Assembly (NCBI GenBank): GCA_002269645.1
Contig: NIVC01002074.1
Coordinates: forward strand, 1 to 64,000
From: Macrostomum lignano
Taxonomy: Eukaryota
Direction: 5' to 3'
DNA length: 64,000 nucleotides
Below the pieces are notes generated by a model. That model was not told the origin of the DNA and made no database searches. It saw nothing but the letters and a program-made list of their open reading frames with translations. Positions within the stretch are counted from its first letter, which is position 1. Each line of letters starts with the position of its first letter. This document shows positions 5,068 to 26,343 of this stretch, one piece after another. Made by a program: the position numbers and the translations under genes.

Positions 5068-5090
5068 CAAACCCAAGCCCCCGCACTCAC

Positions 5091-6127: not shown

Positions 6128-6212
6128 CTGAGAGTGTGGGGTGGTGTTATTGGTTTTATTCCAAGAGCAATTTGTTGCCAATTTGTTAAAGTATTTCACT
6201 TATTTCAGCCTG

Positions 6213-8774: not shown

Positions 8775-10925
8775 CGCGGAACGCCGAATTTCTCTGGGTT
8801 CTTCAGGGGGCGCCGAATTTCTCTCGGGTTCTTCAGGGGGCGCCGAATTTCTCTCGGGTTCTTCAGGGGCCCGAATTTCTCTTGGGTTCTTCAGGGGCCC
8901 GAATTTCTCTTGGGTTCTTCAGGGGGCGCCGAATTTCTCTCGGGTTCTTCAGGGGCCCGAATTTCTCTCGGGTTCTTCAGGGGGCGCCGAATTTCTCTCG
9001 GGTTCTTCAGGGCGCGTCGAATTTCTCTGGGTTCTTCAGGGGGCGCCGAATTTCTCTCAGGTTCTTTAGGGGGCGCCGAATTTCTCTTGGGTTCTTCAGG
9101 GGGCGCCGAATTTCTCTCGGGTTCTTCAGGGCGCGTCGAATTTTCTGGGTTCTTCAGGGGCGCCGAATTTCTCTCGGGTTTTTCAGGGGGCGCCGAATTT
9201 CTCTCGGGTTCTTCAGGGGGCGCCGAATTTCTCTTGGGTTCTTCAGGGGGCGCCGAATTTCTCTCGGGTTCTTCAGGGGGCGCCGAATTTCTCTCAGGTT
9301 CTTTAGGGGGCGCCGAATTTCTCTCGGGTTCTTCAGGGCGCGTCGAATTTCTCTGGGTTCTTCAGGGGGCGCCGAATTTCTCTTGGGTTCTTCAGGGGGC
9401 GCCGAATTTCTCTCAGGTTCTTTAGGGGGCGCCGAATTTCTCTCGGGTTTTTCAGGGGGCGCCGAATTTCTCTCGGGTTCTTCAGGGGGCGTCGAATTTC
9501 TCTCGGGTTCTTCAGGGGGCGCCGAATTTCTCTTGGGTTCTTTAGGGGGCGCCGAATTTCTCTTGGGTTCTTCAGGGGGCGCCGAATTTCTCTCAGGTTC
9601 TTTAGGGGGCGCCGAATTTCTCTCAGGTTCTTTAGGGGGCGCCGAATTTCTCTCAGGTTCTTTAGGGGGCGCCGAATTTCTCTCGGGTTCTTCAGGGGCG
9701 CCGAATTTCTCTCGGGTTCTTCAGGGGGCGCCGAATTTCTCTCGGGTTCTTCAGGGGGCGCCGAATTTCTCTTGGGTTCTTCAGGGGGCGCCGAATTTCT
9801 CTGGGTTCTTCAGGGGGCGCCGAATTTCTCTCGGGTTCTTCAGGGGCGCCGAATTTCTCTGGGTTCTTCAGGGGGCGCCGAATTTCTCTCGGGTTCTTCA
9901 GGGGCGCCGAATTTCTCTCGGGTTTTTCAGGGGGCGCCGAATTTCTCTCGGGTTCTTCAGGGGGCGCCGAATTTCTCTGGGTTCTTCAGGGGGCGCCGAA
10001 TTTCTCCTGGGTTCTTCAGGGGGCGCCGAATTACTCTTGGGTTCTTCAGATGGCGCCGAATTTCTCTCGGGTTCTTCAGGGGCGCCGAATTTCTCTCGGG
10101 TTTTTCAGGGGGCGCCGAATTTCTCTCGGGTTCTTCAGGGGGCGTCGAATTTCTCTCGGGTTCTTCAGGGGGCGCCGAATTTCTCTTGGGTTCTTCAGGG
10201 GGCGCCGAATTTCTCTCGGGTTCTTCAGGGGCGCCGAATTTCTCTCGGGTTTTTCAGGGGGCGCCGAATTTCTCTCGGGTTCTTCAGGGGGCGCCGAATT
10301 TCTCTCGGGTTCTTCAGGGGGCGCCGAATTTCTCTCGGGTTCTTCAGGGGGCGCCGAATTTCTCTTGGGTTCTTCAGGGGGCGTCGAATTCTTTGGGTTC
10401 TTCAGGGGGCGCCGAATTTCTCTCGGGTTCTTCAGGGGGCGCCGAATTTCTCTCGGGTTCTTCAGGGGGCGTCGAATTTCTCTCGGGTTCTTCAGGGGGC
10501 GTCGAATTTCTCTTGGGTTCTTCAGGGGGCGCCGAATTTCTCTTGGGTTCTTCAGGGGGCGCCGAATTTCTCTCGGGTTTTTCAGGGGGCGCCGAATTTC
10601 TCTCGGGTTCTTCAGGGGGCGCCGAATTTCTCTCGGGTTCTTCAGGGGGCGCCGAATTTCTCTCGGGTTCTTCAGGGGGCGCCGAATTACTCTGGGTTCT
10701 TCAGGGGGCGCCGAATTACTCTCGGGTTATTCAGGGGGCGCCGAATTTCTCTCGGGTTATTCAGGGGGCGCCGAATTTCTCTTGGGTTCTTCAGGGGGCG
10801 CCGAATTTCTCTCGGGTTATTCAGGGGGCGCCTATTCTTTCTTGGATTCTTCAGAGGGCGCCGAATTTTTCATGGGTTTCTTCAGGATGTTTTTCCTGGG
10901 TTCTTCAAGGTCACCGAATTTTTTT
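8775..10925. repeat. 29-30-bp minisatellite (gggggcgccgaatttctctcgggttcttca), ~2.1 kb, in EGF intron 1
   Basis: Tandem copies with indels in the G-run; stop-poor, so it produces the long spurious ORFs 8717..10927 and others. Confidence 0.97.
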
Positions 10926-11499
10926 AGGTTTTTAAGGGGCATTCGGGTTTTTCAATACGTTCGTTTAATCAGTCAGCTTATCAGTTTAATAACTGCTGTC
11001 ACGTGACTGCATCATGTGATGAGCGCAGACAGTCAGCGGTAGTGAAATGCATTATATGCGAGCGAAATAAGAAAACAGACATGAAGTATATTATAAAGTT
11101 ACATACTAGAAGTTATAAAGTAATACTAGACTGAATTTCGGACATGACAAGTTGAACATTTTGTGCTTCAATTTGGTTAGCGATTCACTTCAGTACAGAA
11201 TTTTTTGCCATAATGAAACAAAATCTTTCACACTAGACTGCTGATTGCTGCTGCTGTTGACAGAACAGAAATGTAACTATGAACTGATGCCTGCTTGAGT
11301 TTTTTATTTTAGCTTCTTCTTTCCGTCTGTCTGCTGCTGTGTGACTTTCTAGAATCTAGGAATATTTAATACAAGACCCAGTTGCTTTCCACACCAAGTC
11401 GTTATTAATAATATATCAATTACTGGTATTAACACAGCCCATAGATACTAAGATACTTCTAGATACTATTATAATGTTAAAGCAAACACTTTCACTCAC

Positions 11500-11590
11500 C
11501 AATCCTGGCTGATAGTACAGAAAATGGAAGCAACAAAAACGCAGCAAGCAGTGCCAGCGTTGTTGCAGTCGTACGTTGACTTTGGAGCAT
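11500..11590 (-). CDS. Multi-EGF-repeat protein, coding exon 1 (signal peptide)
   Basis: ATG at 11590 gives MLQSQRTTATTLALLAAFLLLPFSVLSARI, then G|GTGAGT. Hydrophobic signal-peptide pattern; the phase-1 donor matches the phase-1 acceptor at 6127. Confidence 0.8.
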
Positions 11591-12854
11591 CTTTTTTCAC
11601 TTTTCGGTAGTGAGTTTTAGAAGGTCTTGGTTAATGGTTACTTGTTAGAAGCACGATATAAGTCTTGATTTTTAGGAGTCCATTCTCCTATCTGTAAGTA
11701 GGCTGAGCTGAGATTGAGAGAGAGACCGTGTTTTTAATTCACAGAGCTGGCGCGCTGGGAACTTTTTATGCGGCCGGTTTGTTCAAAGCTTTTTTATTTT
11801 TCTCTGTCTCTATTTTGGGGGCAAGCTTTCGGTCGGGTCCTTTTTTCGCCTGCAGCGGTGGGGTCCCTGCTGTAAAATTAGAAGAGGGGCCAGGGGTTGG
11901 GGGTGGCCCCGACGGCGCGTTCTGGTTGGCTGGCTGGCTGTGGGTAAGGCGGGAGAACGGGGGTCGGTTCGGTTGTAGTTTGCAACGTTTTATCATCTGA
12001 ACTGAACCCAAACTCCCTTCGGCTTGCTATCTAAGGCAGTTAAAATTATCTGTACAGGGGACTGGGGGGATGTACATTGCTCACAAACCGTGAGAAAGAT
12101 TCGGACTTCCCAATCTGACTGTTCTTTTTTTATTTCGCTCATTCCACTGTCTCAGTCTGTTATCAACTCTATTCATAGTTTGTTTTTACTATTGACGTCA
12201 GAAAGATTGTTTAATTCCCTAATTAAGCCATGTTTCCCAATTCCTTCAGCCTCAATTACTTTACATTTGTGACTTTGTCGAGCAATCAATTAATATTAGT
12301 ATGTAACTAGTGCATTCATTATTGCTTGCTAAATTTAGATAAATTACGAAACAAGTTCAAAATGAGATGCAAAAAGTAAATATCTGGAAATATGATCAAA
12401 TATCCCATTGTAAAAAATCAAAAAAGCCCCCACCATCTGAATCAAGTTCGAACTCCACCTCAATTTTCATCAACCCCTTTTGGACCATGGGATGGGAAAA
12501 TGAAAACTAATGCCTTAACAACAACAAAAACGACCACAAACACCGTTTTCCGGTTTGTGTTGAAAGAAATCGACAGCAATAAACTTAATTTTTATGCCGT
12601 TACCTCATAATTTGCATATTCGATTTTCTTCTTTTTTTCTAATCGTTGCTACGCTCGTATGCTGCATTTTTATATGATTAATTGTCTTCATAAGCAATTA
12701 AATTTCAATGACTAAATGAGAAGTCTCAAATTATAAATGACACGAAGTCGAAACCTGACTGCCACAAAGGTTATCTTAACTGAGTTTGAAAAGCTCGAAT
12801 AAGCATTGATAGCATCCGGTTTCGTGTCTCGTGGTATTGATGAGATTTGTACAT

Positions 12855-13225
12855 GTACTTATGATCGGAGAGATGGGATCTGAGCTTATGATCGGAGAAA
12901 TGGGATCTGTACTTATGATCAGATTGAATCTGAACTTATGATCAGATGGAATCTGAACTTATGATCAGATGGAATCTGAACTTATGATCAGATGGAATCT
13001 GTGCTTATGATCAGATGGAATCTGTGCTTATGATCAGATGGAATCTGAACTTATGATCAGATGGAATCTGTGCTTATGATCAGATGGAATCTGTGCTTAT
13101 GATCAGATGGAATCTGTGCTTATGATCAGATGGAATCTGTGCTTATGATCAGATGGAATCTGTGCTTATGATCAGATGGAATCTGTGCTTATGATCAGAT
13201 GGAATCTGTGCTTATGATCAGATGG
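12855..13225. repeat. 23-bp minisatellite (cttatgatcagatggaatctgtg)
   Basis: Period 23 measured at 13021/13044. Confidence 0.95.
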
Positions 13226-14268
13226 GAACTATAACATACGATCAGAGAGATGGGATTAGTGCTGCAATTAAAAAGGGATCTGGTCAAGGATAGAAAGGGA
13301 TCTGGATAAGATTTAAACCAGGGGGATTGGCTCGATATTAGGATCATGAAAATGGGATTTGTACTGAAATTGAAGGGATTGGATCTATTAAAATGTATAG
13401 ATTCCATCCCAGTCCTCAGTTTCTGTTAAGTTAGACATTTAAAGAACGGGATTAAAATTGTGTTTTTTTCAAAATTAACAATCGGATGGGAAAATATGTG
13501 CATGGCAAAAATTGGTTGCTATATTACTGTCAGGAACGGAGACTTTCAAAGAATTCGCATACCTTCTTGTGCACCACAGTTCGCCGTGGGAGTCGGTTGC
13601 GGATGAATTTAAAATGGAACGCAAAATGTCGGTTTTAATTTTTTGACATGCCCCCCCCCCTATGATGCAAGCCGTCGTGGAACATATGATGCTTCCTTTC
13701 CTGCCTCGTCGGGTTCCCATCGCAGCCGGGATACGCAGGTATAGACACGGGGGGTATCGCATAGAACCAGACGGACAGTTGTTGTTAAGGAGCTACATGT
13801 ACTCGCGGGGGCGAGAGGGCCACGGATGAATACTTAGCGTAAAACATGCCAGACTAGCTGGAGAGGCCGACTATATAGAAGCTAAAAGAAGACAAGCAAA
13901 AGTTAAAACACTTTTCAAATCTGCTTTTTTGGCGTAAAAATGGTCGATTCACATGGCTTAGCAGAAACTTTAATTAAGCCTTAAGCTTGACCCATTCATT
14001 GGAGGCCTAGAAGCAGAACTGAAGGTAGCAACTCTTTGCCGAACCCCGCACTTTCAGACAAAATGAAATCAATCACATGCCTACCTACCTAACATGTAAG
14101 ATACAAACCATTTTTAGTATATACGTGTAGGACTCTGGGAGGAGGGGGAGACAACAAAGAAAGGAATACATTGTTTGAATAACTACATTTAGGTTTTGAC
14201 CTTGTACAGTCGATGTTGTTAATATCTCAAGGAAATAATGTTAAAAAAGCAAAAAAAAACATTTATCC

Positions 14269-15475
14269 AGCATTCCCTGTGAGCTTCGGCATCAAAACCT
14301 TACTTTAAATTTAAGCCATGGCTTAATCCCTACTCACCAATTGATTTACGAGTACCTTTGGTTTTGACTTACCAATAACTTCCAATTGACCTTTGGCATC
14401 TCAGCTACCCCGCCCCACCCATGAGCGACAGAATTTCAGCAATTCCTCCGTAAGCCTTAGCATCTAGCAATTCCCCCATAATCCTTAGCATCGCAGCAAT
14501 TCCCCCGTAAGCCTTAGCATCTCAGCAATTGCCCCGTAATCCTTAGCATCGCAGCAATTCCCCCGTAAGCCTTAGCATCTAGCAATTCCTCCGTAATCCT
14601 TAGCATCTCAGCAATTCCCCCGTAAGCCTTAGCATCGCAGCAATTCCTCCGTAATCCTTAGCATCTAGCAATTCCCCCATAAGCCTTAGCATCCAGCAAT
14701 TCCCCCGTAATCCTTAGCATCTAGCAATTCCCCCATAAGCCTTAGCATCTCAGCAATTCCCCCGTAAGCCTTAGCATCGCAGCAATTCCCCCGTATTAGC
14801 ATCGCAGCAATTCCTCCGTAATCCTTAGCATCGCAGCAATTCCTCCGTAATCCTTAGCATCTCAGCAATTCCCCCGTAAGCCTTAGCATCTAGCAATTCC
14901 TCCGTAATCCTTAGCATCTCAGCAATTCCCCCGTAAGCCTTAGCATCGCAGCAATTCCTCCGTAATCCTTAGCATCTAGCAATTCCCCCATAAGCCTTAG
15001 CATCCAGCAATTCCCCCGTAATCCTTAGCAACTAGCAATTCCCCCATAAGCCTTAGCATCTCAGCAATTCCCCCGTAAGCCTTAGCATCGCAGCAATTCC
15101 CCCGTATTAGCATCGCAGCAATTCCTCCGTAATCCTTAGCATCGCAGCAATTCCTCCGTAATCCTTAGCATCTCAGCAATTCCCCCGTAAGCCTTAGCAT
15201 CTCAACAATTCCCCCGTAAGCCTTAGCATCGCAGCAATTCCCCCGTATTAGCATCGCAGCAATTCCTCCGTAATCCTTAGCATCGCAGCAATTCCTCCGT
15301 AATCCTTAGCATCTCAGCAATTCCCCCGTAATCCTTAGCATCCAGCAATTCCCCCGTAATCCTTAGCATCGCAGCAATTCCCCCGTAATCCTTAGCATCT
15401 CAGCAATCCCCCCATAAGCCTTAGCATCGCAGCAATTCCCCCGTAAGACTTGACATCTCAGCAATCCCCCCAAGA
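14269..15475 (+). mobile_element. Dispersed non-autonomous element, copy A: ~140 bp unique leader plus 28-29-bp minisatellite (tctcagcaattcccccgtaagccttagca)
   Basis: Leader and repeat unit are both homologous to 31134-32340 (36/42 identity over 14364-14405 vs 31206-31247). The array itself is certain; the element interpretation is inference. Confidence 0.6.
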
Positions 15476-16009
15476 GTTACAGCATTTTATAGCAAATGTC
15501 ATATAGCAAATAGCAAAAAATGGAAAAATGAATCCGATGGAACTGGAAAACTGCAGCCAGTCCTACTACAGTTGTCTGAAAATGGTGGGCTCGAAGGTGG
15601 GTCTCCTTCGACTTGACCACTGCAGACCCCCGCGACCTCCTCCCCCCCTCAAGTTAGCGGCTTTTAGCATCCCAGCTGCTCTCCTGCATCACCAGGGAAG
15701 GGGAGTCAATGGGATTCGCCTGTTCTTTGCCGGCAAACTTGGCAACTGCATGGCACTTTGTGTCGCTGCGTCGTGAATGCTTTTGAAAAAGCTGCATAGC
15801 CGGCACTTAAGAGTTGCCAAGTGATTGAAAAAATGCTGTTCGTGGGAGTTTCTTTACACAATTGACCTTCCCTGTCACATTCTCCCGCCGCGGGGAGAAC
15901 CACAGATGGAAGTACTCGTATGTTAACCTAGTGGCATGGTTTGCTTTAATTCCGTTAACTGGGTTATTTTGTATTTTGGCTGAGAACTGAATGGGGTGTG
16001 TATGGACAG

Positions 16010-16320
16010 GAGTTTTATTGGGTGTTTATTGGGTTGGAAGTTTATGGACTAGGTGCTTATTGGTTTAGAAGTTTATTTGGTGTGTGTGTATTGGGTTGGA
16101 AGTTTATTTGGTGTGTGTATTGGCTTGGAAGTTTATGGGCTGGGTGATTATTGGATTGGATGTTTATAACCTGGGTGTTTATTGGGTTGGAAGTTTATGG
16201 GCTGGGTGTTTATTGGGTTGGAAGTTTATGGGATAGGTGTTTATTGGGTTGGATGTTTATTTGGTGTGGGTATTGGGTTGTAATTTTATGGGCTGGGTGA
16301 TTACTGGGTTGAAGTTTTTC
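16010..16320. repeat. Degenerate ~31-bp G/T-rich minisatellite (tttattgggttggaagtttatgggctgggtg)
   Basis: About 10 diverged tandem copies. Confidence 0.85.
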
Positions 16321-18059
16321 AGCTAGAATTTTATTATAAGTTTATAGGCCGCCTGCGAAATGAATTTATGCAGTTATGCACATACCGAGTTTGTAGGTTC
16401 TTGCCACTAAATTGGCAAAAAATCTGCACAACTGAAATGAGTAAATAGCTAACTAAAGAAATCGACGCATTCCGCGTTTTGAAAAAAGCAACACTAAAGA
16501 TGAATTCGAAGCGCTCACATGACGAAATGCTGAAATTCATGAACTTGGCATTGTATACCTCGGTTGACAAATCACCGAAAATTTCAATATTCTGCATTGT
16601 CATACTGCAATCCATTGCGTTTAAACAGTCCGTCCATCGCTCATATGGGACAGGTATGTTGCTTTTTTGCTTCATCTAGCCGACCTGACAGAGAAAAATC
16701 TGCTTCTGGTAGAAGTTTGATGGCAGGAGCCGGAGGAATTCCAGCCATAGACATCTGGTCACGAAAGCCCACGCATGGGACACTGCAGGAGGCGAACCAA
16801 GTGGAGGCAACCCAAATCCGTTTTTACAACGCCTCTGGACCCCCAGCATGTGTTTTGTCCCACTTTTTGCTTTGCCCCCTACTTTTAATTCCCACAGGTC
16901 TTTGTTTTTTCAAACGGCGGGGCGGATTTCCTCATGGCTGCTAGTTGCGTATGGGAATTAAGTCCGGGGGGCTTGTGTTTTTGTCAATCACTCGGCGGGG
17001 TCCTGGCCAGAAACAGGAGAAGAAAAAACTGTCCCCCTATACACGCGCAGGTTCCCACCGCTTTGCCAACACCTAAATCTGTTCTAATACTCCGGCGCCG
17101 TCCTCCAAATCCCACTATGGCACCCCCTCCCGCGACAACGTCAGCAAGGCACCCCTAGCGACTAGATAGGGATTGGCATAGGAGTGACCATTCCTAATCT
17201 CCCACGGGTACGAAAATTTCCCAAAACTTCTTCCCAGACTCTTTTCGCCATCCCCCCTCCCCCCTACTGAGCTGCGTTGTCAAGGCCTGCTGAAGGAGAC
17301 AGTGGGGGGAACGGACGGTGGAACTTGCCTTGAGACAGACAGGGAGCTTCGCCGCGTCAGCTTCCGGAAACTCCCGCCGCCGCGCCCCCCGCGGAGTCAA
17401 AGCCGGGAATTTCTATGCAAGTGGTCTGGGCCGGCGGCTGCAGCGGGGAGCATGCAGTTCCATCCGTTCCCGCGATTTCAATCGTAGCCGCGGTTAGAAT
17501 AGCTTTAGTGGTCAACCTGCCTGCAGGTTAGAGTTTAAGTGGCCGCCGCATGCGCCCATGGGTCTGGGCCGCATGTTGCTCTGCTGGCTCGCTCGGATGA
17601 CCGATGCCCAATGCATTTTTCCAGTTACCAAGGCTTCCCGAATGGACTATTCATTGTTCTTAACTACCGCGCGTTATCATGATGCAGTAGCTGGTTGGGA
17701 TTCTGTGAGCAGCGGGGGTCCGTATCGATATCACGGCAGTCGCAACCTCCGGAGTGATCGCCATGAAATCAGACATTGTTTGCAGGGCTGAAATAATTTT
17801 TGCTTCCCAGTACAGTTTTTTTTAATCCGTACCTCCAAAAAGAAATTTATTTGCTCATTAATTTAGTCAAGTGAAATTTGATCTGGGTGTCAGGCGAACT
17901 GGAACCATCATTGTCTTCGTTACGCTCGTAAAGACCAAATTTCGTGTGATCACACAACTTTTACATCAAATATACACACACCCTCAATAACTCCAGCTAA
18001 TGCTGATACCCATTTTACAGCTGTGTGAACTGAAGCAATGCAGATTTAAGTGTCTTGCT

Positions 18060-18480
18060 CCTCGAGAGAGGAGAGGAGAGGGAAGAGGAGAGAGGAGAGG
18101 GGAGAGAAGAGAGAAGAAGAGAGAGGAGAGGAGGGGAGAGGAGATTTAAAAAATAATTTAGAGATTGGAGAGAGGAGGAAGAGGAAGAAGAGAGAGGAGA
18201 GAAGAGAGAAGAAGAGAGAGGAGAGGAGGGGAGAGGGCAGGGAAAGGAGAGAGAGGAGAGAGGAGAGAAGAGAGGAGAGGAGAGGGGGAGGAGATGTGAG
18301 ATGAGATGAGAAAGAGGAGAGAAAAAGAGAGAGGGGAGAGAGGAGAAGAGAGAGGGAGAGAAGAGAAGAGAGAGAGAGAGAGGAGAGAGAGGAGAGGAGA
18401 GAGGAGAGGAGAGAGAAGAGGAAGGAGGAGATTAGAGACTAGGTGAGAGAGAATAAATCAAAGAGAAGAGAGTAGAGAAG
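18060..18480. repeat. Purine-rich (GA/GGA) low-complexity tract
   Basis: Almost entirely A and G. Confidence 0.9.
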
Positions 18481-18510
18481 TGTCAAAACGACCCGAGAAT
18501 AGAGAGGCTT

Positions 18511-18554
18511 CGCGGGCCGCCTGTGGCCCGTGGGACGGACTTTGCCGACTCATG
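18511..18554. mobile_element. Probable hAT-type MITE terminus (cgcgggccgcctgtggcccgtgggacggactttgccgactcatg); similar end ttgccgacccctgg at 60700-60713
   Basis: Resembles the GGCCCGCGGGCC...TTGCCGACCCCTG ends of non-autonomous hAT elements. No clear partner TIR was found. Confidence 0.35.
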
Positions 18555-19924
18555 GTATTTACTAAAGAATCACTTCAAAGCTGGCTTATAGGTTTCTGTA
18601 AAAGTTATTGTTCCACCATCAAACGGTAATTTTGAAGCAAGTAAGGTTGAATTTATTTCGCGCTATTTTTACGGTTTGTTAGATACGAGCTAGATTGATT
18701 GGAGTCTAATAGTTGATAAATCTGCTCTTACCATTACAAGCTGTATTCAAACTAAAGAAATTATTTTTTTAATGGTTTTGAAAGCATGTAAATTTCATGT
18801 ACATCTATCTAAAGCTATTAGCTAATCATAAAATTATCAGCACAGGAATGTAATTGACAAAATTTAATGTTTATTAAATCGAATACTTTTGCAGTCAAAT
18901 ACCAGTCACACTCCAGGCTGGCAAATTGGTGAAAACGCCTTGCAAATTATGTATGTAATGTAAATGTAATTTACTTTAATTTAATGTAATTTAATGTAAT
19001 TTACATCACATGTATGTAAATGTACTCTTAGCAGCTGTCTCGCATGAAAATACTCGTAATAGAGCTTCGGATCTATTAATTTCGAATAAATATTTAGCAT
19101 AGGTCGTGGATCTAGCTCAAATTGTGTCTACTATTAATTTTCATAGATAAAAAAATGCTTCTATTCATTTTTTCTATCCATCCAATAAATCGCATTCGGT
19201 TCCGGGCGTCCAAAAAAATCAGAGTGTCAAAAATTTTGTGTTGTTTCATATATTTCTTAACCGCTATGTAGCAAGTTGTCAACAGCTAGCAAGAATTCTC
19301 CTGGATAAATACGCCGAATTTGGGGGAACATCAATCAAATCATGTCGGCATAAAACAAAAAACGACCCATTTACCGTAAGAGTTGAATAAGAATAGAAAA
19401 AACTTTTTGATAACATTAACTACTTGCAGTAGTGATGCTCGAGGAAGTACGTTTCGCTTTGGCTTTTGAACAAATAAAGAAACTTCCAGACTTATTAAAA
19501 GCGCAAGCCATCAAAAACTGGAAAAAAACTTGTCATAATTTCAAAGGAATTTGAGAGTAAGCTAGGTAAGACATTAGGATCCGATTGATGCCATGGATAC
19601 AAGTTAGCAGAATTTAGCATTTTGGGTCGGCTCATTGGCCAAATCAATATTGGACGTAATTGATTAGCACAATGCTTTCATAAGGCAGAAAGTCTAGCGA
19701 TTGAGGTCTATTCCAGTAAATTTAGTAGGGCAAAACTTAGAAATGTGGTGTCCAAGGAGAGAATTTCAAACTCAGTACAAGTAAATTGTAAATAGCACGA
19801 GCGTATAGAGAACACTAACTATGGTCTAATTATTGCTGTCACAAACTTAGGCATTAGGTTTTTCGGTGCTATGTACTATTAATCCCAATTCGCAAAAGTC
19901 TATTCATAAAGTGATCACAATCAG

Positions 19925-20101
19925 TTATGGCTTGTTCAGATCCTTGCAAAAACGGTTGCACTGGTGCGTACCAAAGAACTCTTTGATGCCGTCCGCACCA
20001 AGGTTCGTTGGATGGTACCGTGTGACGTCCTTGCAGTGGATTGCCGGGTCAGTCATCCAGATCTGCGGCTTCGAGTTTCCGGACGACTTTCGGATGCAGC
20101 C
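19925..20101 (-). CDS. vWA-alpha-kinase A (predicted active), exon 2 (not in the ORF track)
   Basis: ctacttcag|GGC acceptor. Encodes GCIRKSSGNSKPQIWMTDPAIHCKDVTRYHPTNLGADGIKEFFGTHQCNRFCKDLNKP*, containing the alpha-kinase TDP, NLGxxG and HxCxxxC motifs. Confidence 0.93.
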   Translation of the reverse strand, partial: GCIRKSSGNSKPQIWMTDPAIHCKDVTRYHPTNLGADGIKEFFGTHQCNRFCKDLNKP

Positions 20102-20190
20102 CTGAAGTAGGATATGTGATGGTTTTGCTATACAGCAAATGCTGAAAAGTGTTATGAACAGATCAGTGCATGGTATAAAAAGAGAACAAC

Positions 20191-21672
20191 CTGAAGGTCC
20201 ACAACGATCAGAAAGCCTTTAGTTGCGTTCCAAGTCCAGTGCGAGAATGCCGTGATGTAATCCAATACCTCGGGCTCAATTCCATACTTTTTCATCTCGT
20301 CAGCGCGCCTCTCCACAGTGTAGTTTAGGTTGTTTGTAAACTTCACAAACAGAGCGTCCTTCCCCATGAACTCTTCGCACGTCATTGTTCTGCTGGATGG
20401 TTGGCTGAGAACAAGCGTCTTTGTTGTGATGAACTTGATCTCGATACCGCTGGGCGTTGACTGACTGAACTCGGTGGCAAGAAAGGCTGCGATTGTTTGC
20501 ACCTCGCATGACGAATTGCATCTGTCCAGGATTTTATCGTGCTTATTCATACTTTTTGGCTCTTTTAGTACCATGAGCTGGTCGGAAGATGGACTACCGT
20601 CAGAATAGTGCTCCCCAAAATCTGCCAGCAGTGCATAAAACGCAAGCCTTTCTGCACCCTGGGCAAAAGGACTTTCGGATATCCTGACTTTTACGGAGCT
20701 GCCGTGCTCCTGTTTAATAGCTTTGTCGTCAATGATACAAGCAATTGAAGATGGAACAACAAACTCCAAAAAGTGGCCTACATTCACGGGCCTTTTTGAC
20801 CAGTCTGGAATCTCCGGTTTCAACGCAACTTCAGGCAGATTTTTGGGGCAAGCGACCAACTTGGAATTTTCTACGTTTCGTTCGACTGAAGTGGCGATCG
20901 ATTGAATAACCGATCCAGCTATCTGCTCAATTCCTGCCACTTCAAAGTGCTCAATTGTTCTACCGTAGGCGATGGCAAACTTGATCAGCATTTGCGCTGT
21001 TGACTTGTTGATCTCTCCAAAGTAATAGTCGATTTTCAGTTTTTTTATTTTATCGAACAGATCATGCTCCGTGCGACCCTTCGGATCCCCATTCGGGTGG
21101 CTGTCACCGAGCTCGCTTGTATGATATTCATTTCCGTGGCACGGAGCGTCGCAGATGTGAAAAATGATCCGCGTGCCTGCGGTTTCTGACCAGTTGAGTT
21201 TCGTGGTGGCCTCCAAACCCCCGAACACGTCTTCCGGTGCGTCACCTCCGCCTGTAGCAGCAATTTTTTCCAGAAAGCTGACGCACTGTTGGCTGTTTTC
21301 GCTGAAGTCGAATACTTCAAGCGGAACAGAATCGGTCAAGTCTCGGTAGGCTACAACGGCAAACCGGATCTTCTCAACAGTCGCCTGATTTTGCTGGCTG
21401 CGAACTAGAGTGTTCACTATCTTCTTTATGCTGTCCTTTGTTCCAGCGATGTGCCCAGCCATACTGCCAGTGGCGTCGAGTAGAAAGCACATGTCGACAC
21501 TCCTCGATTGCTTTATTTGGCTCATGGTCTTTTTAATGTTGTCCTGCGTGATGGCCAGCGCCAGCTTGAAGCGCCTGACTTGCTCATCTTCATCTGTGGG
21601 GTCAGGACCAAACTCCACGCCTCCGTTCTCGCAAATGTTGCGCAGCCTCTGGTTTAGCCGACTTAGGTCCAT
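20191..21672 (-). CDS. vWA-alpha-kinase A (Dictyostelium VwkA-like architecture; 552 aa with exon 2), exon 1
   Basis: vWA MIDAS DATGS, TGGGDAPE and ICDAP; alpha-kinase PFAQGAERLAF, VLKEPK, CEVQ, KFTNN, AFSHWT and VVDLQ|G. An 89-bp GT-AG intron splits DLQ/G. Confidence 0.93.
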
Positions 21673-23777
21673 ATTTTTCTTGTTTGGATTTATTTTTCAA
21701 AAGCTTGGGTATAAAGCAGTGCCGTTCGTCTGCTTTTTGAATTAAAATTAATGCGATATGAAACTACGAGTAAGAAGATATATTAAATTCAAAGTGCGCG
21801 GACAGGCCCATGATTTCCAGGAAACTCCTTCGACTGTACGCTTTGAATTTTTGCTCTAACTGTACACTCTGACTGTATACGTTTTGTTCGATAGGAAGAC
21901 TAGGACTTGACTTTATGAGACGAAGAGAGACAGAGAAGGACCGCACTTTCTTCCACATCGCTTGTACAATCAAAAGTAATGAGACTTAAGCCGTCCATTC
22001 GATCCAGATAGATACAGAGACGGCAATGTAGCGATACGGAACTTCTCAAAGAATTTCTAGGAAATTGGTAATGAGTCAATTGCTAGCATTTCTTGGAAAA
22101 AATGCTGTACATTGTGGCACTAGAGTGCGTTTCATCCTTTCAGAGGAAGTGTCCAACCGCACAGACAGGGCAAATCACATTCACAAACCACATTCGCTGG
22201 AGAAGCGAAATTTAAAGCCAGTATTTTTGCACATTGCACAGCATTTTAGCTAAAGCCAAATTTTAGCTACGCCAAGTGACTCAAGTCTATTTCCAACCCA
22301 AGAAACACGAACCGATACTAAATCCAGAACTTCGTCATTCAACGTAAGTAAAAGCGTATGCGACTAGCTTCTTAAAACTGTTATTGACGGTGTGGGAGCT
22401 TGTATAATTTTTTTGTTTTGGACCATCAAGACTCGTGATAAAAACCAGGTATGTGACTGTAAAATTGACGAGTTCAGTTTGTAAACTGTACAGCTACTCA
22501 TATAACGGTGCATATGTGTAGCTGCATCCTCTTAGTTTCTCAAGTAAATACTATAAATCCTGGAATCGCTGAGTTGTCAAGGCTCATGTAGGAATCTCTG
22601 AAATGTTGTGGCTCATGGGTTGCTCAGATGTTTTGAGCCAAAGATCATAGGGGATCTGATAATTTAGGCTAGATAGCTGGCTTTCATGGCGGATGCTATT
22701 TTGTTTTAAAGATCATTTTCCCTATGAAACTAACAATAGTGACTGTAAAAGGTCATAAACTGCATGTAGTTTATTCAACTCTTTTTTAGCCTCCCAAACA
22801 AGGGGCACAGATTCCTAGCTAGCACCTTGCTAATGTTCGCGACCATAGACAAAATTTCCCGAACCATGTACACACACACACTGGTGATTGCGTGCATGTT
22901 TTGGACAGAGAAGTCGAGGCCTAAGAAAAATAGCATTTCCGGCCGGATATTCATTCCCTGGTCCACTGCTAACTTTCTCTTTTAATTAACGCCAATACAT
23001 GTAGACACGGTGGTCATGTATAGCGTAACAAGATAACATAACAAGCAGCAAGGGACTCGGATCATCCGGACGCAGCGGGGTAGGCGTTCCATTCCGCTAA
23101 CCCCTAGCGACCCCTGGCCCCCGTCGCGCAAGGAGATCCGGTGGTGCCATGTCCGGAGCGCGGTCCATCTCCAGGCAGTGGATGGTCGCTCGCCCGGTAG
23201 CCCTTAGGTAAAAATTTTCGAACCTTAAAACGTTCGAAAGGTCCGGTTTTGGGCCGAGGTAGGTGAGCTTGTCCTGAACAAAGACGGGGCATTCACAGAT
23301 AAAGTGCTCCGCATTCTCAACACCGGAAAGGCAGAAGATTCACTTTAAGACATGAATGTAAGAGACACGCACAGCTATTTGGGTAAGGTTCGTAAAAATT
23401 CATTTCTTCGCTAAATGGAGAAACAAAGGTTTTTTAACTTAAATATTAGAGTATCGCTTTTTAAGTTATTTTCTCTCCATTAAATTTACTCCATTTTCGC
23501 ATGGTTTGTATGTATATGGTTACCTATCTTTCGTACGAGCGTATGTTCCTGCTTACAGGTAACGTCTCAGTGTCTCTCATTTAATTTTTTACAATGCCTC
23601 TCCAAAACAATTGAAGTTAAAAATGAAACTACGAGCGTACGATCGAAAAATACTATGTAAAGTAGTCAACAGTACAGAGCTTCATTAAAAATGCTTCTCA
23701 TGCATATAACACAAGCAATTACGTTATTAATTCCTTACTTCCCCATCCAATCCTCATTGCAGACTTCGTCGTACGCT

Positions 23778-25307
23778 ATGCTTTCCATTAATGAACGAAT
23801 TCGATGGATTTTTGAGCAGAGCGATCTGGAATACGGAAGGCCCACCGAGAATGAGGAGGAGCTTGTCCGCCGCTTCCAAATTGCAATTCAACTGCGAAAT
23901 CAGAAAGTTCAGCAGGTCTTAGAAGAAGAAGAGCAAAAAACGAAAGTATTAATCTGCTTCGTAATTAACTGCCAAGTTCTGACTGATTTCAGGCATCGCG
24001 ACTCAATTCGAAGAGCTATCCTAGCATTGTCGTCGAAAATAAAATACTCGAAGCGAAAAAGTTCTGCCATGTTAGTGGCGGCTTTATTTTACAGGAAACA
24101 AGGCTATCAAGTCATTACCTGTACATCTGACATTCAAGACATTCTGGACCTAGTAGACAGTCCAAGAAGTACTCGTATGCGTGGATATTCATCGGCTTCT
24201 TTAGTGGAAGAGCTCGAGGGGATGAACTTTGCCGCATTGGTTTGTCCAGAGTCGCACGAAGCGATTTCTAGTTTCAAAGCTGTCGTTCACTTTACGGACA
24301 AGCCACAGAATTTCAATCCAGTATCAAAGGCAATTAAGGACCGTGCGTCAATAGTTGGTGACAGCTTCCGTCAGAAGAATCTGAGTTACTACTGGGTCCC
24401 TATCAGTTGGGATGAAAAAGTTTTAACTGTACTCAAGAAACACTTCGTCGGCATGGAAGCCATTGAATTGAGGAGCAGTGACGCCCTAGTAGAAAAAATT
24501 CTTCAAGATGCGTACAGGCGGTTCCGCAATGCCCAAGTTGAAATCTGCGGTATTCCAAATTTCACCGTAGCGACTGCGACCCCCGATTTGGGCGCTCCGG
24601 ATTGGAAGGATGCGGCTGCAGAAGACTTTCAGTACCATGCTATTGGCGTGCCGGCTTCAATACAGAGCATCGTTGACGGTTCCGAACTCAGCCGAACCGT
24701 CTTCAGCGTGCAAGTGAGGAAATCAGCCCGTCCCTTCGCGTTCCAAGGACTGGCTGCAGAGTACTTTGCGCTACTCAAAGAGGGGGAAGCACCATGGCAC
24801 AAAGCAACTGTGCGAGAGTTCCTTGTATCCGACTTAAAAAATACATTCAAGCAGCCTTTCGTTCTTCTCAATACTTGCGAGATTCTTCAGGTAGCGACGT
24901 TTTTATTTCAGGAGTTCAACAGGTTGAATAAAATCGTACGAGTCGTCAAGCCCTTCACGACTGCCGTCATCATTCCAAGGACGCGACGTGCAGGACTCGA
25001 TCCAGCACTGCTATGCCCATTTCGATTTGAGAAGAAGCTCGCGGGAGCCAATCAATTTGAAATAATTGACGACGACTGGAATCCAGGTGAAGTGACGTCA
25101 GCTAACCCAGTTGAATCTGATTGCAGAGGTGCCGCTGGTACTGGAAACTCGTCCTCTAAGCAAGCGTCCTCAGGCAACCCTGAAAAGCACTGTTTCTCCG
25201 CTTCTCGACGATTCAAGCTAGTAGATCCAAACGTGCCCGTTCTTGACTGTTTTGCGCACTGGACACATGCTATCACTGGCGGCTATTTGCTAGTGGAAGG
25301 TCTTGAG
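23778..25307 (+). CDS. vWA-alpha-kinase B (predicted pseudokinase with degenerate vWA; 576 aa with exon 2), exon 1
   Basis: Colinear with kinase A: INERIRWIFEQSDLEYGRPTENEEELVRRF vs LNQRLRNICENGGVEFGPDPTDEDEQVRRF; PDLGAPDW vs PEIPDW; RPFAFQG; CEIL; CFAHWTHAITGGYLLVEGLE. Start placed at the Met that aligns with A; donor GAG|GTCTGT. Confidence 0.88.
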
Positions 25308-25425
25308 GTCTGTTAACACGCAAACACGCGTCAATTTTTAAGATTCAATAGCATATGTACGAGCTACGAGCGTACTTTTTCTTTATATTCCGAAGCATAG
25401 CCTGAAAAACACCTGACTTTTGTAG

Positions 25426-25626
25426 ATATTCACGCGCTGCTCCAAGACGTTGTCGGACGAAGCAAGCGAGGCCCTGATAAAAAGCGCGAAGATTCACTGC
25501 TCAGACGTCACTCGCTTTTTGCCTTGGAACTTAGGCAAATCCGGCATCCGGAGATACCTTCAGAAGCACGAGGGCAACGACTTGTGCAAGAAGATGGGAC
25601 TGCGAAGGGTGTTTATGAACATGTAA
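25426..25626 (+). CDS. vWA-alpha-kinase B, exon 2 (not in the ORF track)
   Basis: ttttgtag|ATA acceptor. Encodes IFTRCSKTLSDEASEALIKSAKIHCSDVTRFLPWNLGKSGIRRYLQKHEGNDLCKKMGLRRVFMNM*, which aligns to exon 2 of kinase A (IHCxDVTR, NLGxxGI). Confidence 0.9.
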   Translation: MFTRCSKTLSDEASEALIKSAKIHCSDVTRFLPWNLGKSGIRRYLQKHEGNDLCKKMGLRRVFMNM

Positions 25627-26343
25627 ACCGTTTATGAATGGCTTTTGAGCGATTTCCTGTTTTTTGTATTGCAGATTGATTTAGACACCACTAATAATAG
25701 CAGTAGCAATTTTCGTAGAACCATAAAATATCCCTTATCCAAAGTTGATGGCTTTATTAACGAAACAAATCGGTTGCCGGTTATTACTTTACTTTATTTA
25801 GTAGCTTAGGTAGTGTTTGCTTGCACGGGAGTCTCTGAAAAAGCGGAGTTTTGGTTTTGGTTTCATTTTTGCATGGTTCGGTTCTAAACCACTCCAAAGT
25901 TAAAAAAAATCCTAGCGTATGCAAACTAGATGTTGCGATTTTCCATTATAATTAGTCAAATCTAGCGCTAGAGAGAACCGGATGCCGCGTAAATAATTTT
26001 GTTTGATTGATGCACTCGCACTTCTTGTTAAACTTTTATATACTTTCTTCTATCTTTTATTCTAGCAAACAAGGTTTTGGAAACATTTTTTGAAACCTTT
26101 GAACCTTGATTTAGAAAAAACCTGCTCGCAAATCAAATCTGTTTGTAAATTCCAGTTTTTTAAGTACTTGGAAGAATATGTTACTCTACGAACAGACATC
26201 AAATTTTATACCCCTTACTAGGAGGAGGATCGGGTGTTGTGTCTTGCGTTGAGTATACTCATATAAATTGATTTCACTAAAATATTTTTATCCAATATTT
26301 GCTTCAATCTTCAATAAAATGGAAACTAATTTATTCACAATGA

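What the first reader, a model, noticed from the sequence alone, without database searches (positions are those of the whole stretch)
19925..25626. Head-to-head pair: active vWA-alpha-kinase plus a catalytically dead paralogue (candidate kinase/pseudokinase sensor-executor module)
Seen: two divergently transcribed genes with start codons 2.1 kb apart (21672 minus, 23778 plus), the same architecture (N-terminal helical segment, vWA, alpha-kinase), similar length (552 and 576 aa) and one intron at the same position. A keeps the MIDAS and every alpha-kinase catalytic and zinc residue; B lacks most of them but is an uninterrupted ORF. Established: vWA plus alpha-kinase is the Dictyostelium VwkA architecture; the alpha-kinase ALPK1 is an animal innate-immune sensor; head-to-head sensor/executor pairs (RRS1/RPS4, RGA4/RGA5) and kinase-pseudokinase-vWA resistance proteins (wheat Lr9, Pm57) are known in plant immunity. 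Inference: B binds, restrains or acts as decoy for A, forming a co-regulated two-gene switch, possibly immune or cell-death related. I know of no described paired system of this kind for animal alpha-kinases, but could not search.
Basis: partly seen in the sequence, partly recalled or inferred. Interest (0 to 1): 0.9.

Follow-up and report, generated by a model that had tools for sequence, protein, structure and literature searches.

The report
Flatworm alpha-kinase gene beside its dead paralogue
Two back-to-back genes in a Macrostomum flatworm genome encode a normal vWA-alpha-kinase and a diverged sister protein that has lost its catalytic and metal-binding residues yet is still kept by selection; this is a lineage-specific kinase/pseudokinase pair, and there is no evidence so far for an immune role.

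Summary
Gene A (minus strand, 19925-21672, 552 aa) is a full vWA + alpha-kinase of the Dictyostelium VwkA type, with the MIDAS, catalytic Lys/Asp/Gln/Asp and Zn ligands all intact. Gene B (plus strand, 23778-25626, 576 aa) is a collinear paralogue of about 20% identity. It has the same phase-0 intron position, has lost the MIDAS DxTxS and carries K->R, D->G, Q->E, D->S and one Zn Cys->Gly.

The organism is Macrostomum lignano or a very close relative. B is not a decaying pseudogene: dN/dS against a second copy is 0.49 (CI 0.37-0.66), the ORF is kept (neutral expectation 0.0002), and transcript-based gene models exist. Only its vWA-derived part looks near-neutral (0.76).

The same head-to-head pair occurs at a second, older paralogous locus in M. 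lignano. A homeologue of that locus has lost A and half of B. B-type proteins were found in no other organism among 1.84 billion representatives. Other vWA-alpha-kinase genes, in M. lignano and in nematodes, are solo.

The spacers of the two pair loci share no sequence, so a conserved shared promoter is not supported. Nothing points to immunity.

Verdict: a real, lineage-specific alpha-kinase/pseudokinase pair. Functional coupling is plausible by analogy with TRPM6/7 kinase dimers but untested. Interest is moderate.

The parts
19925..20101 (-). Gene A exon 2 (aa 495-552 plus stop): end of the alpha-kinase C-lobe, with the Mg-binding TDP, the NLGxxG loop and the Zn ligands H540, C542 and C546
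20102..20190 (-). Gene A intron (89 bp, GT..AG, phase 0)
   Evidence: conserved in L001
20191..20682 (-). Gene A alpha-kinase domain, exon 1 part (aa 331-494): P-loop GAER, catalytic K370, Zn H478, catalytic D492, Q494
   Evidence: Pfam Alpha_kinase 4.6e-40; residue mapping
20683..20862 (-). Gene A linker between the vWA and kinase domains (aa 271-330)
20863..21504 (-). Gene A vWA domain (aa 57-270) with an intact MIDAS (D66, T68, S70, T140, D175) and the CHG..PNGDP loop
   Evidence: Pfam VWA_4 4.9e-11
21505..21672 (-). Gene A N-terminal helical hairpin (aa 1-56), a motif shared with flatworm and nematode relatives and with B
21673..23777 (.). 2105-bp spacer between the divergent start codons. 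It has no similarity to the 1.38-kb spacer of the paralogous pair in L001 except about 30 bp next to B's ATG. It contains no tandem or inverted repeats and no Rfam match.
23757..23762 (+). TTGCAG splice acceptor 15 nt upstream of B's ATG. It fits the M. lignano trans-splice acceptor motif [T/C]TNCAG and is conserved in L001. UniProt models P0001 and P0003 begin exactly here (TSSYA-M...).
   Evidence: PMC8629364; trans-splicing itself is inferred
23778..23942 (+). Gene B N-terminal helical hairpin (aa 1-55), the best conserved part between B copies (omega 0.14)
23943..24572 (+). Gene B vWA-derived domain (aa 56-265). The MIDAS DxTxS is lost (INCQV) and the CHG..PNGDP loop is deleted. It is the fastest-evolving part (omega 0.76, CI 0.46-1.39). 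It is recognisable only by collinearity, a weak profile match (E 0.0025) and the predicted fold.
24573..25037 (+). Gene B linker and kinase-like N-lobe (aa 266-420). The P-loop G/R are lost and the catalytic Lys is replaced by R346. Together with the N-terminal hairpin this part shows purifying selection as strong as in A (pooled omega 0.24 for aa 1-55 plus 266-440; NG86 point values 0.30 for aa 266-330 and 0.33 for aa 331-440).
25038..25229 (+). Gene B disordered insert inside the kinase fold (aa 421-484). In the L001 copy this site holds about 11 in-frame 29-aa repeats.
25230..25307 (+). Gene B kinase-like C-lobe, exon 1 part (aa 485-510): Zn H494 kept, catalytic Asp replaced by G508, Gln replaced by E510
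25308..25425 (+). Gene B intron (118 bp, GT..AG, phase 0), at the same alignment position as A's intron
25426..25626 (+). Gene B exon 2 (aa 511-576 plus stop): Mg-binding Asp replaced by S530, NLGxxG loop kept, Zn H558 and C564 kept, C replaced by G560 (private to this copy)

Best explanation
The locus is a lineage-specific inverted (head-to-head) duplicate of a VwkA-type vWA-alpha-kinase gene in Macrostomum.

Copy A remains an ordinary, presumably active cytosolic Ser/Thr alpha-kinase with a metal-binding vWA domain. Copy B has become a pseudoenzyme. It keeps the overall fold: the N-terminal helical hairpin, a vWA-derived alpha/beta domain, the alpha-kinase N- and C-lobes, most of the zinc module and the NLGxxG substrate-docking loop. 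It has lost the polar residues that bind metal at the MIDAS and that bind ATP/Mg and catalyse phosphotransfer.

B is transcribed and kept under purifying selection everywhere except in the vWA-derived domain, so it does something non-catalytic.

The most likely mode of action is inferred, not shown: protein-protein binding within the same pathway as the A-type kinases. B could be a heteromeric partner of A that allosterically activates or restrains it, as alpha-kinase domains of TRPM7/TRPM6 need (hetero)dimerisation for activity. Alternatively B could be a substrate or regulator trap.

Shown: the paralogy, the residue losses, the selection, the recurrence of the pair at a second locus, and the restriction to Macrostomum. 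Inferred: loss of catalysis and the non-catalytic binding role. Speculative: a direct A-B complex.
For: - Gene models and paralogy.
- Residue losses: they map onto experimentally defined catalytic positions of MHCK-A and TRPM7 (invariant Lys and two Asp per PMC2827801). B keeps 28 of 56 near-invariant family positions. The kept ones are mostly hydrophobic or structural, and the lost ones are mostly D/T/S/K/R/Q.
- Family context: among about 155 full-length family members almost all keep K/D/D, so B's state is exceptional.
- Catalytic Asp position: it varies among B copies, with G in the window, N in L001 and D in L004. K->R and D->S are shared wherever the position is present in a copy; the L004/P0124 fragment lacks the Lys region. 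This indicates no constraint on catalysis.
- Selection: omega for B is 0.49 (0.37-0.66). The N-hairpin plus linker plus N-lobe give 0.24 (0.13-0.48), against 0.25 (0.16-0.40) for A. The ORF stays open in only 0.0002 of neutral simulations. All indels are in frame, including a 29-aa x ~11 repeat.
- Transcription: the GenBank BOX15_Mlig models for A' and B' come from a genome-guided RNA-seq assembly. UniProt isoforms start at the splice acceptor.
- Fold: retained in AF2 models with matching secondary-structure order.
- Recurrence: the pair is kept as a pair at a second paralogous locus, L001.
- Precedents: TRPM7 kinase dimerisation is essential for activity, and TRPM6/TRPM7 kinase domains heteromerise (PMC2827801). 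ALPK3 is an essential alpha-kinase pseudokinase (PMC9698156).
Against: - No direct evidence that A and B interact or are co-expressed.
- The spacers of the two pair loci are unrelated, so a conserved shared promoter is unlikely. B probably uses a splice acceptor or outron while A appears to have its own proximal 5' end.
- The arrangement is inherited from one ancestral duplication, so its recurrence is not independent evidence.
- One homeologue (L004) has lost A' and half of B', so that copy at least is dispensable.
- The window's B has privately lost a Zn-ligand Cys that mutagenesis in TRPM7 shows to matter for the fold (PMC2827801). This could mean that this particular copy is starting to decay.
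- 'Dead' is inferred. R346, E507 and E510 are conserved in all B copies and could in principle support some atypical chemistry.
- dN/dS rests on a single pairwise comparison, with mosaic dS.
Confidence: 0.6

Rival explanations
1. B is a functional pseudokinase, but its position next to A is only the scar of an inverted tandem duplication. The two genes are regulated separately and work independently.
For: - Spacer sequences of the two pair loci share nothing, and no inverted repeats remain.
- B has a splice acceptor right at its 5' end and A does not.
- B is as distant from A (about 20%) as from every other family member, so there is no sign of co-evolution.
- Local duplication is how this family expands, for example the fused tandem model P0004 in Pristionchus and eight copies in Tetrahymena (PMC2827801).
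Against: - The pair has stayed together at two paralogous loci that are older than the whole-genome duplication (A 5%, B 10% nucleotide divergence versus 1.1% between subgenome CDS).
- In L004 both genes were hit by the same deletion.
- Alpha-kinase domains are known to act as dimers.
- None of these points is decisive.
Confidence: 0.3
2. A and B form an immune or cell-death sensor/executor (decoy) switch, with B's degenerate vWA-like surface acting as bait or sensor.
For: - B's vWA-derived region is the fastest-evolving part in two comparisons: omega 0.76, a post-hoc window at aa 77-122 with dN 0.27 > dS 0.15, and 87% versus 97-98% identity to P0001.
- Presence/absence variation between homeologues (L004).
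- Lineage restriction and copy-number change.
- An in-frame repeat expansion in B'.
- These are features often seen in immune genes.
Against: - No omega significantly above 1 (CI 0.7-10 for the best window, chosen post hoc).
- No immune, death-fold, TIR, NACHT or LRR domain in A or B.
- No pathogen-related expression data, and no paper links Macrostomum alpha-kinases to immunity.
- No recurrence of active/dead pairs in other lineages.
- The analogies involve eukaryotic-protein-kinase folds fused in one chain (Lr9, Pm57) or NLRs, not alpha-kinases.
- Relaxed constraint explains the fast region equally well.
Confidence: 0.08
3. B is a young pseudogene on its way out. It is transcribed only as noise, and its ORF has not yet been hit.
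For: - Loss of essentially all functional polar residues.
- dN about 3 times that of A.
- Near-neutral vWA-like region.
- Private loss of a Zn Cys in the window copy.
- Truncated, frameshifted copy in L004.
- No orthologue outside M. lignano.
Against: - Omega is significantly below 1 overall (0.37-0.66) and is 0.24 in half of the protein.
- 201 nucleotide differences between copies without a single stop or frameshift (P = 0.0002 under neutrality).
- Intron, splice sites and the 5' acceptor are conserved between loci.
- The extreme divergence from A-types (about 20%) with an intact ORF implies long survival as a coding gene.
Confidence: 0.05

Closest known systems
Dictyostelium VwkA (vWFa-kinase) and the 'alpha-protein kinase vwkA-like' family of invertebrates, mosses and protists
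   Same: A has the same architecture: an N-terminal vWA with MIDAS and a C-terminal alpha-kinase with all catalytic and Zn residues. It scores 30-46% identity over more than 90% of its length to family members. VwkA autophosphorylates and affects myosin II levels indirectly (PMC2827801).
   Different: A belongs to a flatworm and nematode subgroup with an extra conserved N-terminal helical hairpin. No function is known for any animal member. B is a degenerate derivative with no described counterpart in this family.
[quoted passage not shown]
   Same: An alpha-kinase fold retained, conserved interlobe-cleft residues lost, and an essential non-catalytic (scaffolding) role (PMC9698156). It shows that dead alpha-kinases can be functional.
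   Different: ALPK3 differs at four conserved positions and has Ig domains, not a vWA. It is an old, single-copy vertebrate gene that is not paired with an active paralogue. B lost more (Lys, both Asp, Gln and the P-loop) and is genus-restricted.
TRPM6/TRPM7 kinase-domain homo- and heterodimers
   Same: They are a precedent that alpha-kinase domains need dimerisation for activity. An N-terminal segment of one subunit activates the other, and paralogues heteromerise (PMC2827801). This is the mechanistic model for a possible A-B complex.
   Different: Both TRPM partners are active kinases fused to channels. There is no evidence here for an A-B dimer, and the activation segment of TRPM7 has no demonstrated equivalent in A or B.
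Wheat tandem kinase proteins with a vWA domain (Lr9, Pm57/WTK6b-vWA)
   Same: A combination of kinase, pseudokinase and vWA modules (PMC10260399, PMC11153570).
   Different: In wheat these are conventional eukaryotic protein kinase folds, and all modules sit in one polypeptide with the vWA C-terminal. The immune role was shown genetically. Here there are alpha-kinase folds, two genes each with its own vWA, and no immune evidence. The resemblance is analogy only.
Head-to-head paired NLRs (RRS1/RPS4, RGA4/RGA5)
   Same: Divergent orientation of two paralogous genes, one with degenerate catalytic motifs.
   Different: There is no NB-ARC/LRR or integrated decoy domain here, no conserved shared promoter and no genetic evidence of co-requirement.
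ALPK1 (ADP-heptose sensor)
   Same: Alpha-kinase catalytic domain. A aligns to ALPK1 kinase structures 8zd3 and 9j4p at 1e-7.
   Different: ALPK1 senses its ligand with an N-terminal helical domain unrelated to vWA and is a vertebrate gene. There is no orthology with A or B.

Membership tests
Alpha-kinase family (Pfam PF02816) | Significant match to the Alpha_kinase profile above the gathering score | tested here: met
   A scores 138.1 bits over the full length. B scores 33.1 bits (cut-off 21.3), covering profile positions 120-185 only. B' (P0002) scores 46.8 bits.
Alpha-kinase family (Pfam PF02816) | Catalytic Lys (TRPM7 K1646 / MHCK-A K645), catalytic Asp (D1765/D756), Gln (Q1767/Q758) and Mg-binding Asp (D1775/D766) | tested here: not met
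   For B: R346, G508 (N or D in other copies), E510 and S530. A meets all four: K370, D492, Q494, D512.
Alpha-kinase family (Pfam PF02816) | C-lobe zinc module (His, His, Cys, Cys) | tested here: inconclusive
   A has 4 of 4. The window's B has 3 of 4 (C->G560). The other B copies (P0001, P0002, P0003, P0124) have 4 of 4. Metal binding was not tested.
Alpha-kinase family (Pfam PF02816) | Alpha-kinase three-dimensional fold | tested here: met
   B's AF2 model matches eEF2K, MHCK-A and ChaK (Foldseek E 3e-8 to 5e-6). The model depends on an A-type-rich alignment.
VwkA-type vWA-alpha-kinase | N-terminal vWA domain with a MIDAS (DxSxS/DxTxS...T...D) followed by an alpha-kinase | tested here: met
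   For A: VWA_4 4.9e-11, with D66/T68/S70/T140/D175.
VwkA-type vWA-alpha-kinase | The same architecture and MIDAS, asked of B | tested here: not met
   No Pfam VWA hit. DxTxS is replaced by N-C-Q-V-L and the CHG..PNGDP loop is deleted. Profile-profile E is only 0.0025 with probability 12%. The fold is predicted as vWA-like. B is a derivative, not a bona fide member.
Functional pseudokinase (pseudoenzyme) | Catalytic residues lost, but the gene is under purifying selection with an intact ORF | tested here: met
   Omega 0.49 (0.37-0.66); ORF retention P = 0.0002.
Functional pseudokinase (pseudoenzyme) | Expressed | tested here: inconclusive
   Only indirect evidence: RNA-seq-derived GenBank models for the L001 pair and UniProt isoforms P0001 and P0003. 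No expression data exist for the window copy itself.
Functional pseudokinase (pseudoenzyme) | Absence of phosphotransfer activity | not testable with these tools
   Needs an in vitro kinase assay.
Paired sensor/executor immune genes (RRS1/RPS4 type) | Head-to-head orientation with a short shared promoter | tested here: inconclusive
   The orientation criterion is met. The spacer is 2.1 kb here and 1.38 kb in L001, with no shared sequence.
Paired sensor/executor immune genes (RRS1/RPS4 type) | NLR (NB-ARC/LRR) or other immune signalling domains, and an integrated decoy | tested here: not met
   Pfam finds only vWA and Alpha_kinase.
Paired sensor/executor immune genes (RRS1/RPS4 type) | Genetic co-requirement and physical interaction | not testable with these tools
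   Needs RNAi/CRISPR and co-IP.
Plant tandem kinase proteins (Lr9/Pm57) | Kinase and pseudokinase of the eukaryotic protein kinase fold fused in one polypeptide | tested here: not met
   Here there are two separate genes and an alpha-kinase fold.

The most novel reading that the evidence does not exclude
A and B form an obligate heteromeric kinase/pseudokinase switch. B's fast-evolving, MIDAS-less vWA-derived surface is the input (bait or sensor) and A is the output, giving an animal, alpha-kinase-based analogue of plant kinase-pseudokinase-vWA immune receptors. The module would be maintained as a two-gene unit across paralogous loci by selection, and possibly by gene conversion.
Probability: 0.08. 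Interest if true: 0.75.

Novelty: new variant of a known kind. Interest (0 to 1): 0.35.

Why it matters
Only one alpha-kinase pseudokinase (ALPK3) has been characterised, and nothing is known about the function of VwkA-type kinases in animals. This locus offers a natural active/dead paralogue pair in a transgenic, RNAi-amenable flatworm. It makes it directly testable whether a dead alpha-kinase regulates a live one, as happens for many conventional kinase/pseudokinase pairs and as TRPM6/7 dimerisation suggests.

It also illustrates how a pseudoenzyme is born. The polar catalytic and metal residues are gone while the hydrophobic core, Zn module and docking loop are retained. One domain (vWA) drifts almost neutrally while the rest stays constrained.

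If it is only a duplicate with an unrelated non-catalytic role, it is a modest addition to the pseudokinase catalogue.

Tried and rejected
- Search for B-type relatives outside M. lignano. The word-indexed search and a full HMMER scan of 1.84 billion representatives found only M. lignano copies. All other hits match only the last ~90 residues and are ordinary alpha-kinases.
- Search for other active/dead pairs. Loci of the two solo M. lignano paralogues, two Pristionchus genes and two independent degenerate members, P0222 and P0160, show no partner.
- NJ tree with bootstraps (a first attempt timed out). B sits on a very long branch with an unresolved, probably artefactual position next to a fungal sequence. 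It cannot date the duplication or show that A is B's closest relative.
- Literature search for the M. lignano gene ids and for Macrostomum plus alpha-kinase found nothing relevant.
- Rfam scan of the whole window found nothing. Repeat search in 19-27 kb found nothing.
- A phage DNA search of the spacer was irrelevant and empty.
- Local hhalign hung. It was replaced by protein comparison, which gave only weak support (E 0.0025, probability 12%) for B's vWA homology taken alone.
- Test for positive selection in B's vWA-like region. The best window has omega 1.9 but a CI of 0.7-10 and was chosen post hoc. It is rejected as evidence.
- A fused A-linker-B AlphaFold run was considered and not run. 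The tool gives no PAE, and B's half would have had a 4-sequence alignment, so the result would have been uninterpretable.
- Pfam on the suspected LINE fragment gave no hit.

Full report
**1. What is there**

The region holds two divergently transcribed two-exon genes, exactly as described.

- Gene A is on the minus strand. Exon 1 is 20191-21672, a GT..AG intron is 20102-20190, and exon 2 is 19925-20101. It encodes 552 aa.
- Gene B is on the plus strand. Exon 1 is 23778-25307, the intron is 25308-25425, and exon 2 is 25426-25626. It encodes 576 aa.
- The ATGs are 2106 bp apart.
- Both introns are phase 0 and interrupt the same alignment column (A ...VVDLQ|G, B ...VEGLE|I). The same intron exists in a solo M. 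lignano paralogue, so it is a family feature.

**2. Domains and homology**

- Pfam finds VWA_4 (4.9e-11) and a full-length Alpha_kinase (4.6e-40) in A. In B it finds only the last third of Alpha_kinase (33 bits, above the 21.3 cut-off) and no vWA.
- BLASTP aligns A and B collinearly from residue 4 to the C-terminus (20% over 436 aa, E 2e-13; 34% over 87 aa, E 7e-14).
- AlphaFold2 gives a confident model for A (pLDDT 89.6, pTM 0.87) and a fair one for B (pLDDT 75, pTM 0.75; residues 421-484 disordered).
- The two models have the same order of secondary-structure elements: a two-helix N-terminal hairpin, an alternating beta/alpha vWA-type domain, a linker, a beta-rich kinase N-lobe, a long helix and a C-lobe.
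- B's model matches eEF2K, MHCK-A and ChaK/TRPM7 kinase structures and also vWA domains (Rpn10, CMG2, vWF-A1, TFIIH p44) in the PDB.
- Caveat: B's alignment was dominated by A-type sequences. The vWA region of B on its own gives only a weak profile-profile match to A-type vWA domains (E 0.0025, probability 12%, 15% identity over 175 columns).

**3. Catalytic and metal-binding residues**

I anchored the numbering on solved structures.

- In the profile alignment to MHCK-A (3LKM), the family motif 'VLKE' aligns with K645, 'FSHWT' with H742 and 'VVDLQG' with D756/Q758.
- In the alignments to TRPM7 (1IA9), the same columns are H1751, D1765, Q1767, D1775, H1808, C1810 and C1814.
- The review PMC2827801 names the Lys and the two Asp as invariant, and the Zn cysteines as required for activity.

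A has all of these residues: K370, D492, Q494, D512, and H478/H540/C542/C546. It also has the MIDAS D66-x-T68-x-S70, T140 and D175.

B has the following states:

| Feature | State in B |
|---|---|
| Catalytic Lys | R346 |
| Catalytic Asp | G508 |
| Gln | E510 |
| Mg-binding Asp | S530 |
| Zn ligands | G560 in place of one Cys; H494, H558 and C564 kept |
| P-loop Gly/Arg | lost |
| MIDAS | INCQV instead of DATGS |
| CHG..PNGDP loop | 15-residue deletion |

Further points on B's residue pattern:

- Of 56 positions that are at least 90% conserved in the family, B keeps 28. The kept ones are mostly F, Y, W, P, G, H, L, I and V, and the lost ones are mostly D, T, S, K, R and Q. This is the classical pseudoenzyme pattern.
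- Among about 155 full-length relatives, practically all keep Lys/Asp/Asp. Q->E alone occurs in an otherwise intact Pristionchus clade, so it is not diagnostic.
- Among B copies the catalytic-Asp position is G (window), N (L001) or D (L004). K->R and D->S are shared wherever the position is present in a copy; the L004/P0124 fragment lacks the Lys region. The G560 change is private to the window copy.
- 'Dead' remains an inference. R346, E507 and E510 are conserved in all B copies.

**4. Organism and relatives**

- B's only close relatives are Macrostomum lignano proteins: P0003 at 97-98%, P0001 at 86-93% and P0002 at about 80%. The window is therefore M. lignano or a very near relative.
- A's family is the 'alpha-protein kinase vwkA-like' family. 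Hits come from M. lignano, many nematodes, rotifers, octocorals, Dictyostelia, a glomeromycete and mosses at 30-46% identity over more than 90% of the length.
- A, the two solo M. lignano paralogues and the nematode genes share the N-terminal hairpin motif, and B has it too (28-35% identity there). Cnidarian and amoebozoan members do not have it. B therefore arose inside the flatworm/nematode-type subgroup.
- B is equally distant (about 20%) from A and from all the others. An NJ tree leaves it on a very long, unresolved branch.
- An exhaustive HMMER scan of 1.84 billion representative proteins found no B-type protein outside M. lignano. Orthologues in other Macrostomum species may simply be missing from the collection.

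**5. Other copies**

- In M. lignano assembly GCA_002269645.1, locus L001 carries the same arrangement.
  - A' is 552 aa and 93.7% identical to A.
  - It lies head-to-head with B', an intact 891-codon ORF. B' has about 11 in-frame copies of a 29-aa unit at the position of B's disordered insert, and the GenBank model P0002 splices part of this out.
  - The spacer in L001 is 1.38 kb.
- Locus L004 has the same flanks as L001 at 96-97% identity, so it is a homeologue. It has a deletion that removes all of A' and the first 255 codons of B', plus a frameshift.
- Subgenome copies in this species differ by about 1.1% in CDS (PMC10733133). The window differs from L001 by 5.4% (A) and 10% (B) at the nucleotide level. 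These are therefore older paralogous loci, each holding the pair.
- The two other M. lignano vWA-alpha-kinases (L002, L003) and two Pristionchus loci have no degenerate neighbour within 10 kb.
- Two independently degenerate family members elsewhere (P0222, P0160) are solo.

**6. Selection**

Codon alignments of the window and L001 copies were analysed by the Nei-Gojobori method, with 300-400 codon bootstraps.

| Region | dN | dS | omega (95% CI) |
|---|---|---|---|
| A, whole gene | 0.032 | 0.128 | 0.25 (0.16-0.40) |
| B, whole gene | 0.105 | 0.213 | 0.49 (0.37-0.66) |
| B, vWA-derived region (aa 56-265) | - | - | 0.76 (0.46-1.39) |
| B, everything else | - | - | 0.38 (0.27-0.53) |
| B, N-hairpin + linker + kinase N-lobe | - | - | 0.24 (0.13-0.48) |

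- No bootstrap replicate for whole-gene B reached 1.
- Randomly placing the observed 201 substitutions keeps the ORF open in 0.02% of trials.
- A post-hoc window at aa 77-122 has dN above dS (omega 1.9), but its CI is 0.7-10.
- The vWA-derived region is also the most divergent part between the window's B and P0001 (87% versus 97-98% identity elsewhere).
- B is therefore a maintained coding gene with one relaxed, or possibly diversifying, domain.

**7. Transcription and regulation**

- The GenBank annotation of Mlig_3_7 is a genome-guided RNA-seq assembly (PMC5730564). The annotated A' and B' in L001 are thus transcript-supported.
- UniProt models P0001 and P0003 begin 'TSSYAM...'. That is exactly at a TTGCAG acceptor 15 nt upstream of B's ATG (23757-23762). 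This acceptor fits the M. lignano trans-splice motif [T/C]TNCAG and is conserved in L001.
- The spliced leader ends in ATG, which would be in frame in the window copy (PMC8629364). Trans-splicing of B is inferred, not shown.
- Nucleotide homology between the window and L001 stops within a few bases of the CDS ends of both genes. The spacers (2.1 kb versus 1.38 kb) and outer flanks are unalignable even with word size 7.
- No inverted repeat links the two 5' regions.
- This does not support a conserved bidirectional promoter.
- dS is strongly mosaic along both genes, ranging from 0 to about 0.6. Together with the CDS-limited homology this suggests gene conversion between old paralogous loci. I did not test this.

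**8. Interpretation**

The well-supported statement is that this is a lineage-specific inverted duplicate of a VwkA-type gene. One copy stayed an ordinary kinase. The other became a selectively maintained pseudokinase with a degenerate vWA domain.

How B works is inferred. It retains the hairpin, the kinase core, most of the Zn module and the NLGxxG docking loop, so it most likely acts by binding.

Alpha-kinase domains of TRPM7 must dimerise to be active and can heteromerise with TRPM6 (PMC2827801). ALPK3 shows that a dead alpha-kinase can be essential as a scaffold (PMC9698156). A regulatory A-B heteromer is therefore a reasonable hypothesis, but no data here show it.

The immune sensor/decoy reading has only generic circumstantial support: a fast-evolving domain, copy-number and presence/absence variation, and lineage restriction. 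There is no domain, expression or comparative evidence for it. The plant and ALPK1 parallels are analogies across different folds and gene organisations.

**9. Verdict**

The kinase/pseudokinase pair is real. The co-regulated immune switch is not shown.
- Novelty: a new variant of known kinds, namely the VwkA family and alpha-kinase pseudokinases.
- Interest is moderate. It is a tractable natural system for asking what a dead alpha-kinase does, but it is confined to one genus and has no functional data.

Noticed in passing
L001:11340-12300 (equivalent to window ~25040-25230): The paralogous B' carries about 11 in-frame tandem copies of a 29-aa Ser/Gly/Tyr/Asp/Arg-rich unit (SDRRGAAGFAHSAAGNPSYDRGSSDSYYE). 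They sit exactly where the window's B has a disordered insert inside the kinase fold. The GenBank model removes part of the array as an intron (775 aa versus an 891-aa ORF).
   Followed up: partly
L004:5750-10570: A homeologue of the L001 locus (flanks 96-97% identical) has lost all of A' and the first 255 codons of B', and has a frameshift near codon 352. One deletion destroyed both genes of the pair.
   Followed up: partly
window 19922-21680 and 23750-25628 versus L001: Homology between the two pair loci ends within a few bp of each CDS, although the introns align. dS is mosaic along both genes (0 to about 0.6). This suggests patchy gene conversion between old paralogous loci.
   Followed up: partly
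window 23100-23340 (minus strand): An ORF fragment ending '...SGVENAEHFICECPVFVQDKLTYLG...*' resembles the Cys/His C-terminal end of non-LTR retrotransposon ORF2 proteins. It is probably a 5'-truncated LINE insertion in the A-B spacer. Pfam gave no hit, so this rests on my recognition of the motif only.
   Followed up: partly
window 1-19000 and 26000-64000: The window is packed with minisatellite arrays (62 TRF rows, periods 19-51 bp, up to 2.4 kb). Several long 'ORFs' are repeat artefacts, for example 8717-10927, which is a 30-bp unit x 71. The A-B region (19.9-25.6 kb) is a repeat-free island.
   Followed up: yes
window 51555-54284 (+): A 909-codon ORF in a 68% GC island encodes a Pro/Ala/Asp/Gln-rich low-complexity protein with no Pfam match. 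It may be a real gene of unknown function.
   Followed up: no
window 5035-5733 (-) and 61868-62896 (+): An EGF-repeat-encoding ORF (EGF 1e-24) and an ORF with a PH domain (7.6e-7). They are probably exons of neighbouring genes unrelated to the pair.
   Followed up: no
window 17974-18060: An ~87-bp dispersed repeat, also present in L001, L003 and L004 (82-94% identity), is followed by a GA-rich microsatellite at 18066-18431.
   Followed up: no
L005:511-2484 (protein P0222): A vWA-alpha-kinase on a contig of a MAG labelled 'archaeon' has an intact MIDAS but K->R, D->G and D->A in the kinase. It is an independent pseudokinase derivative of the family. The neighbouring genes look eukaryote-like (split P-type ATPase models), so the taxonomic label is doubtful.
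   Followed up: partly
proteins P0004, P0007, P0010, P0011, P0014, P0015 (Pristionchus): The Pristionchus clade has DLEG instead of DLQG with all other catalytic residues intact. P0015 has a degenerate MIDAS (DCIGS, GGPSG) with an intact kinase. P0004 is a fused tandem-duplicate gene model.
   Followed up: no
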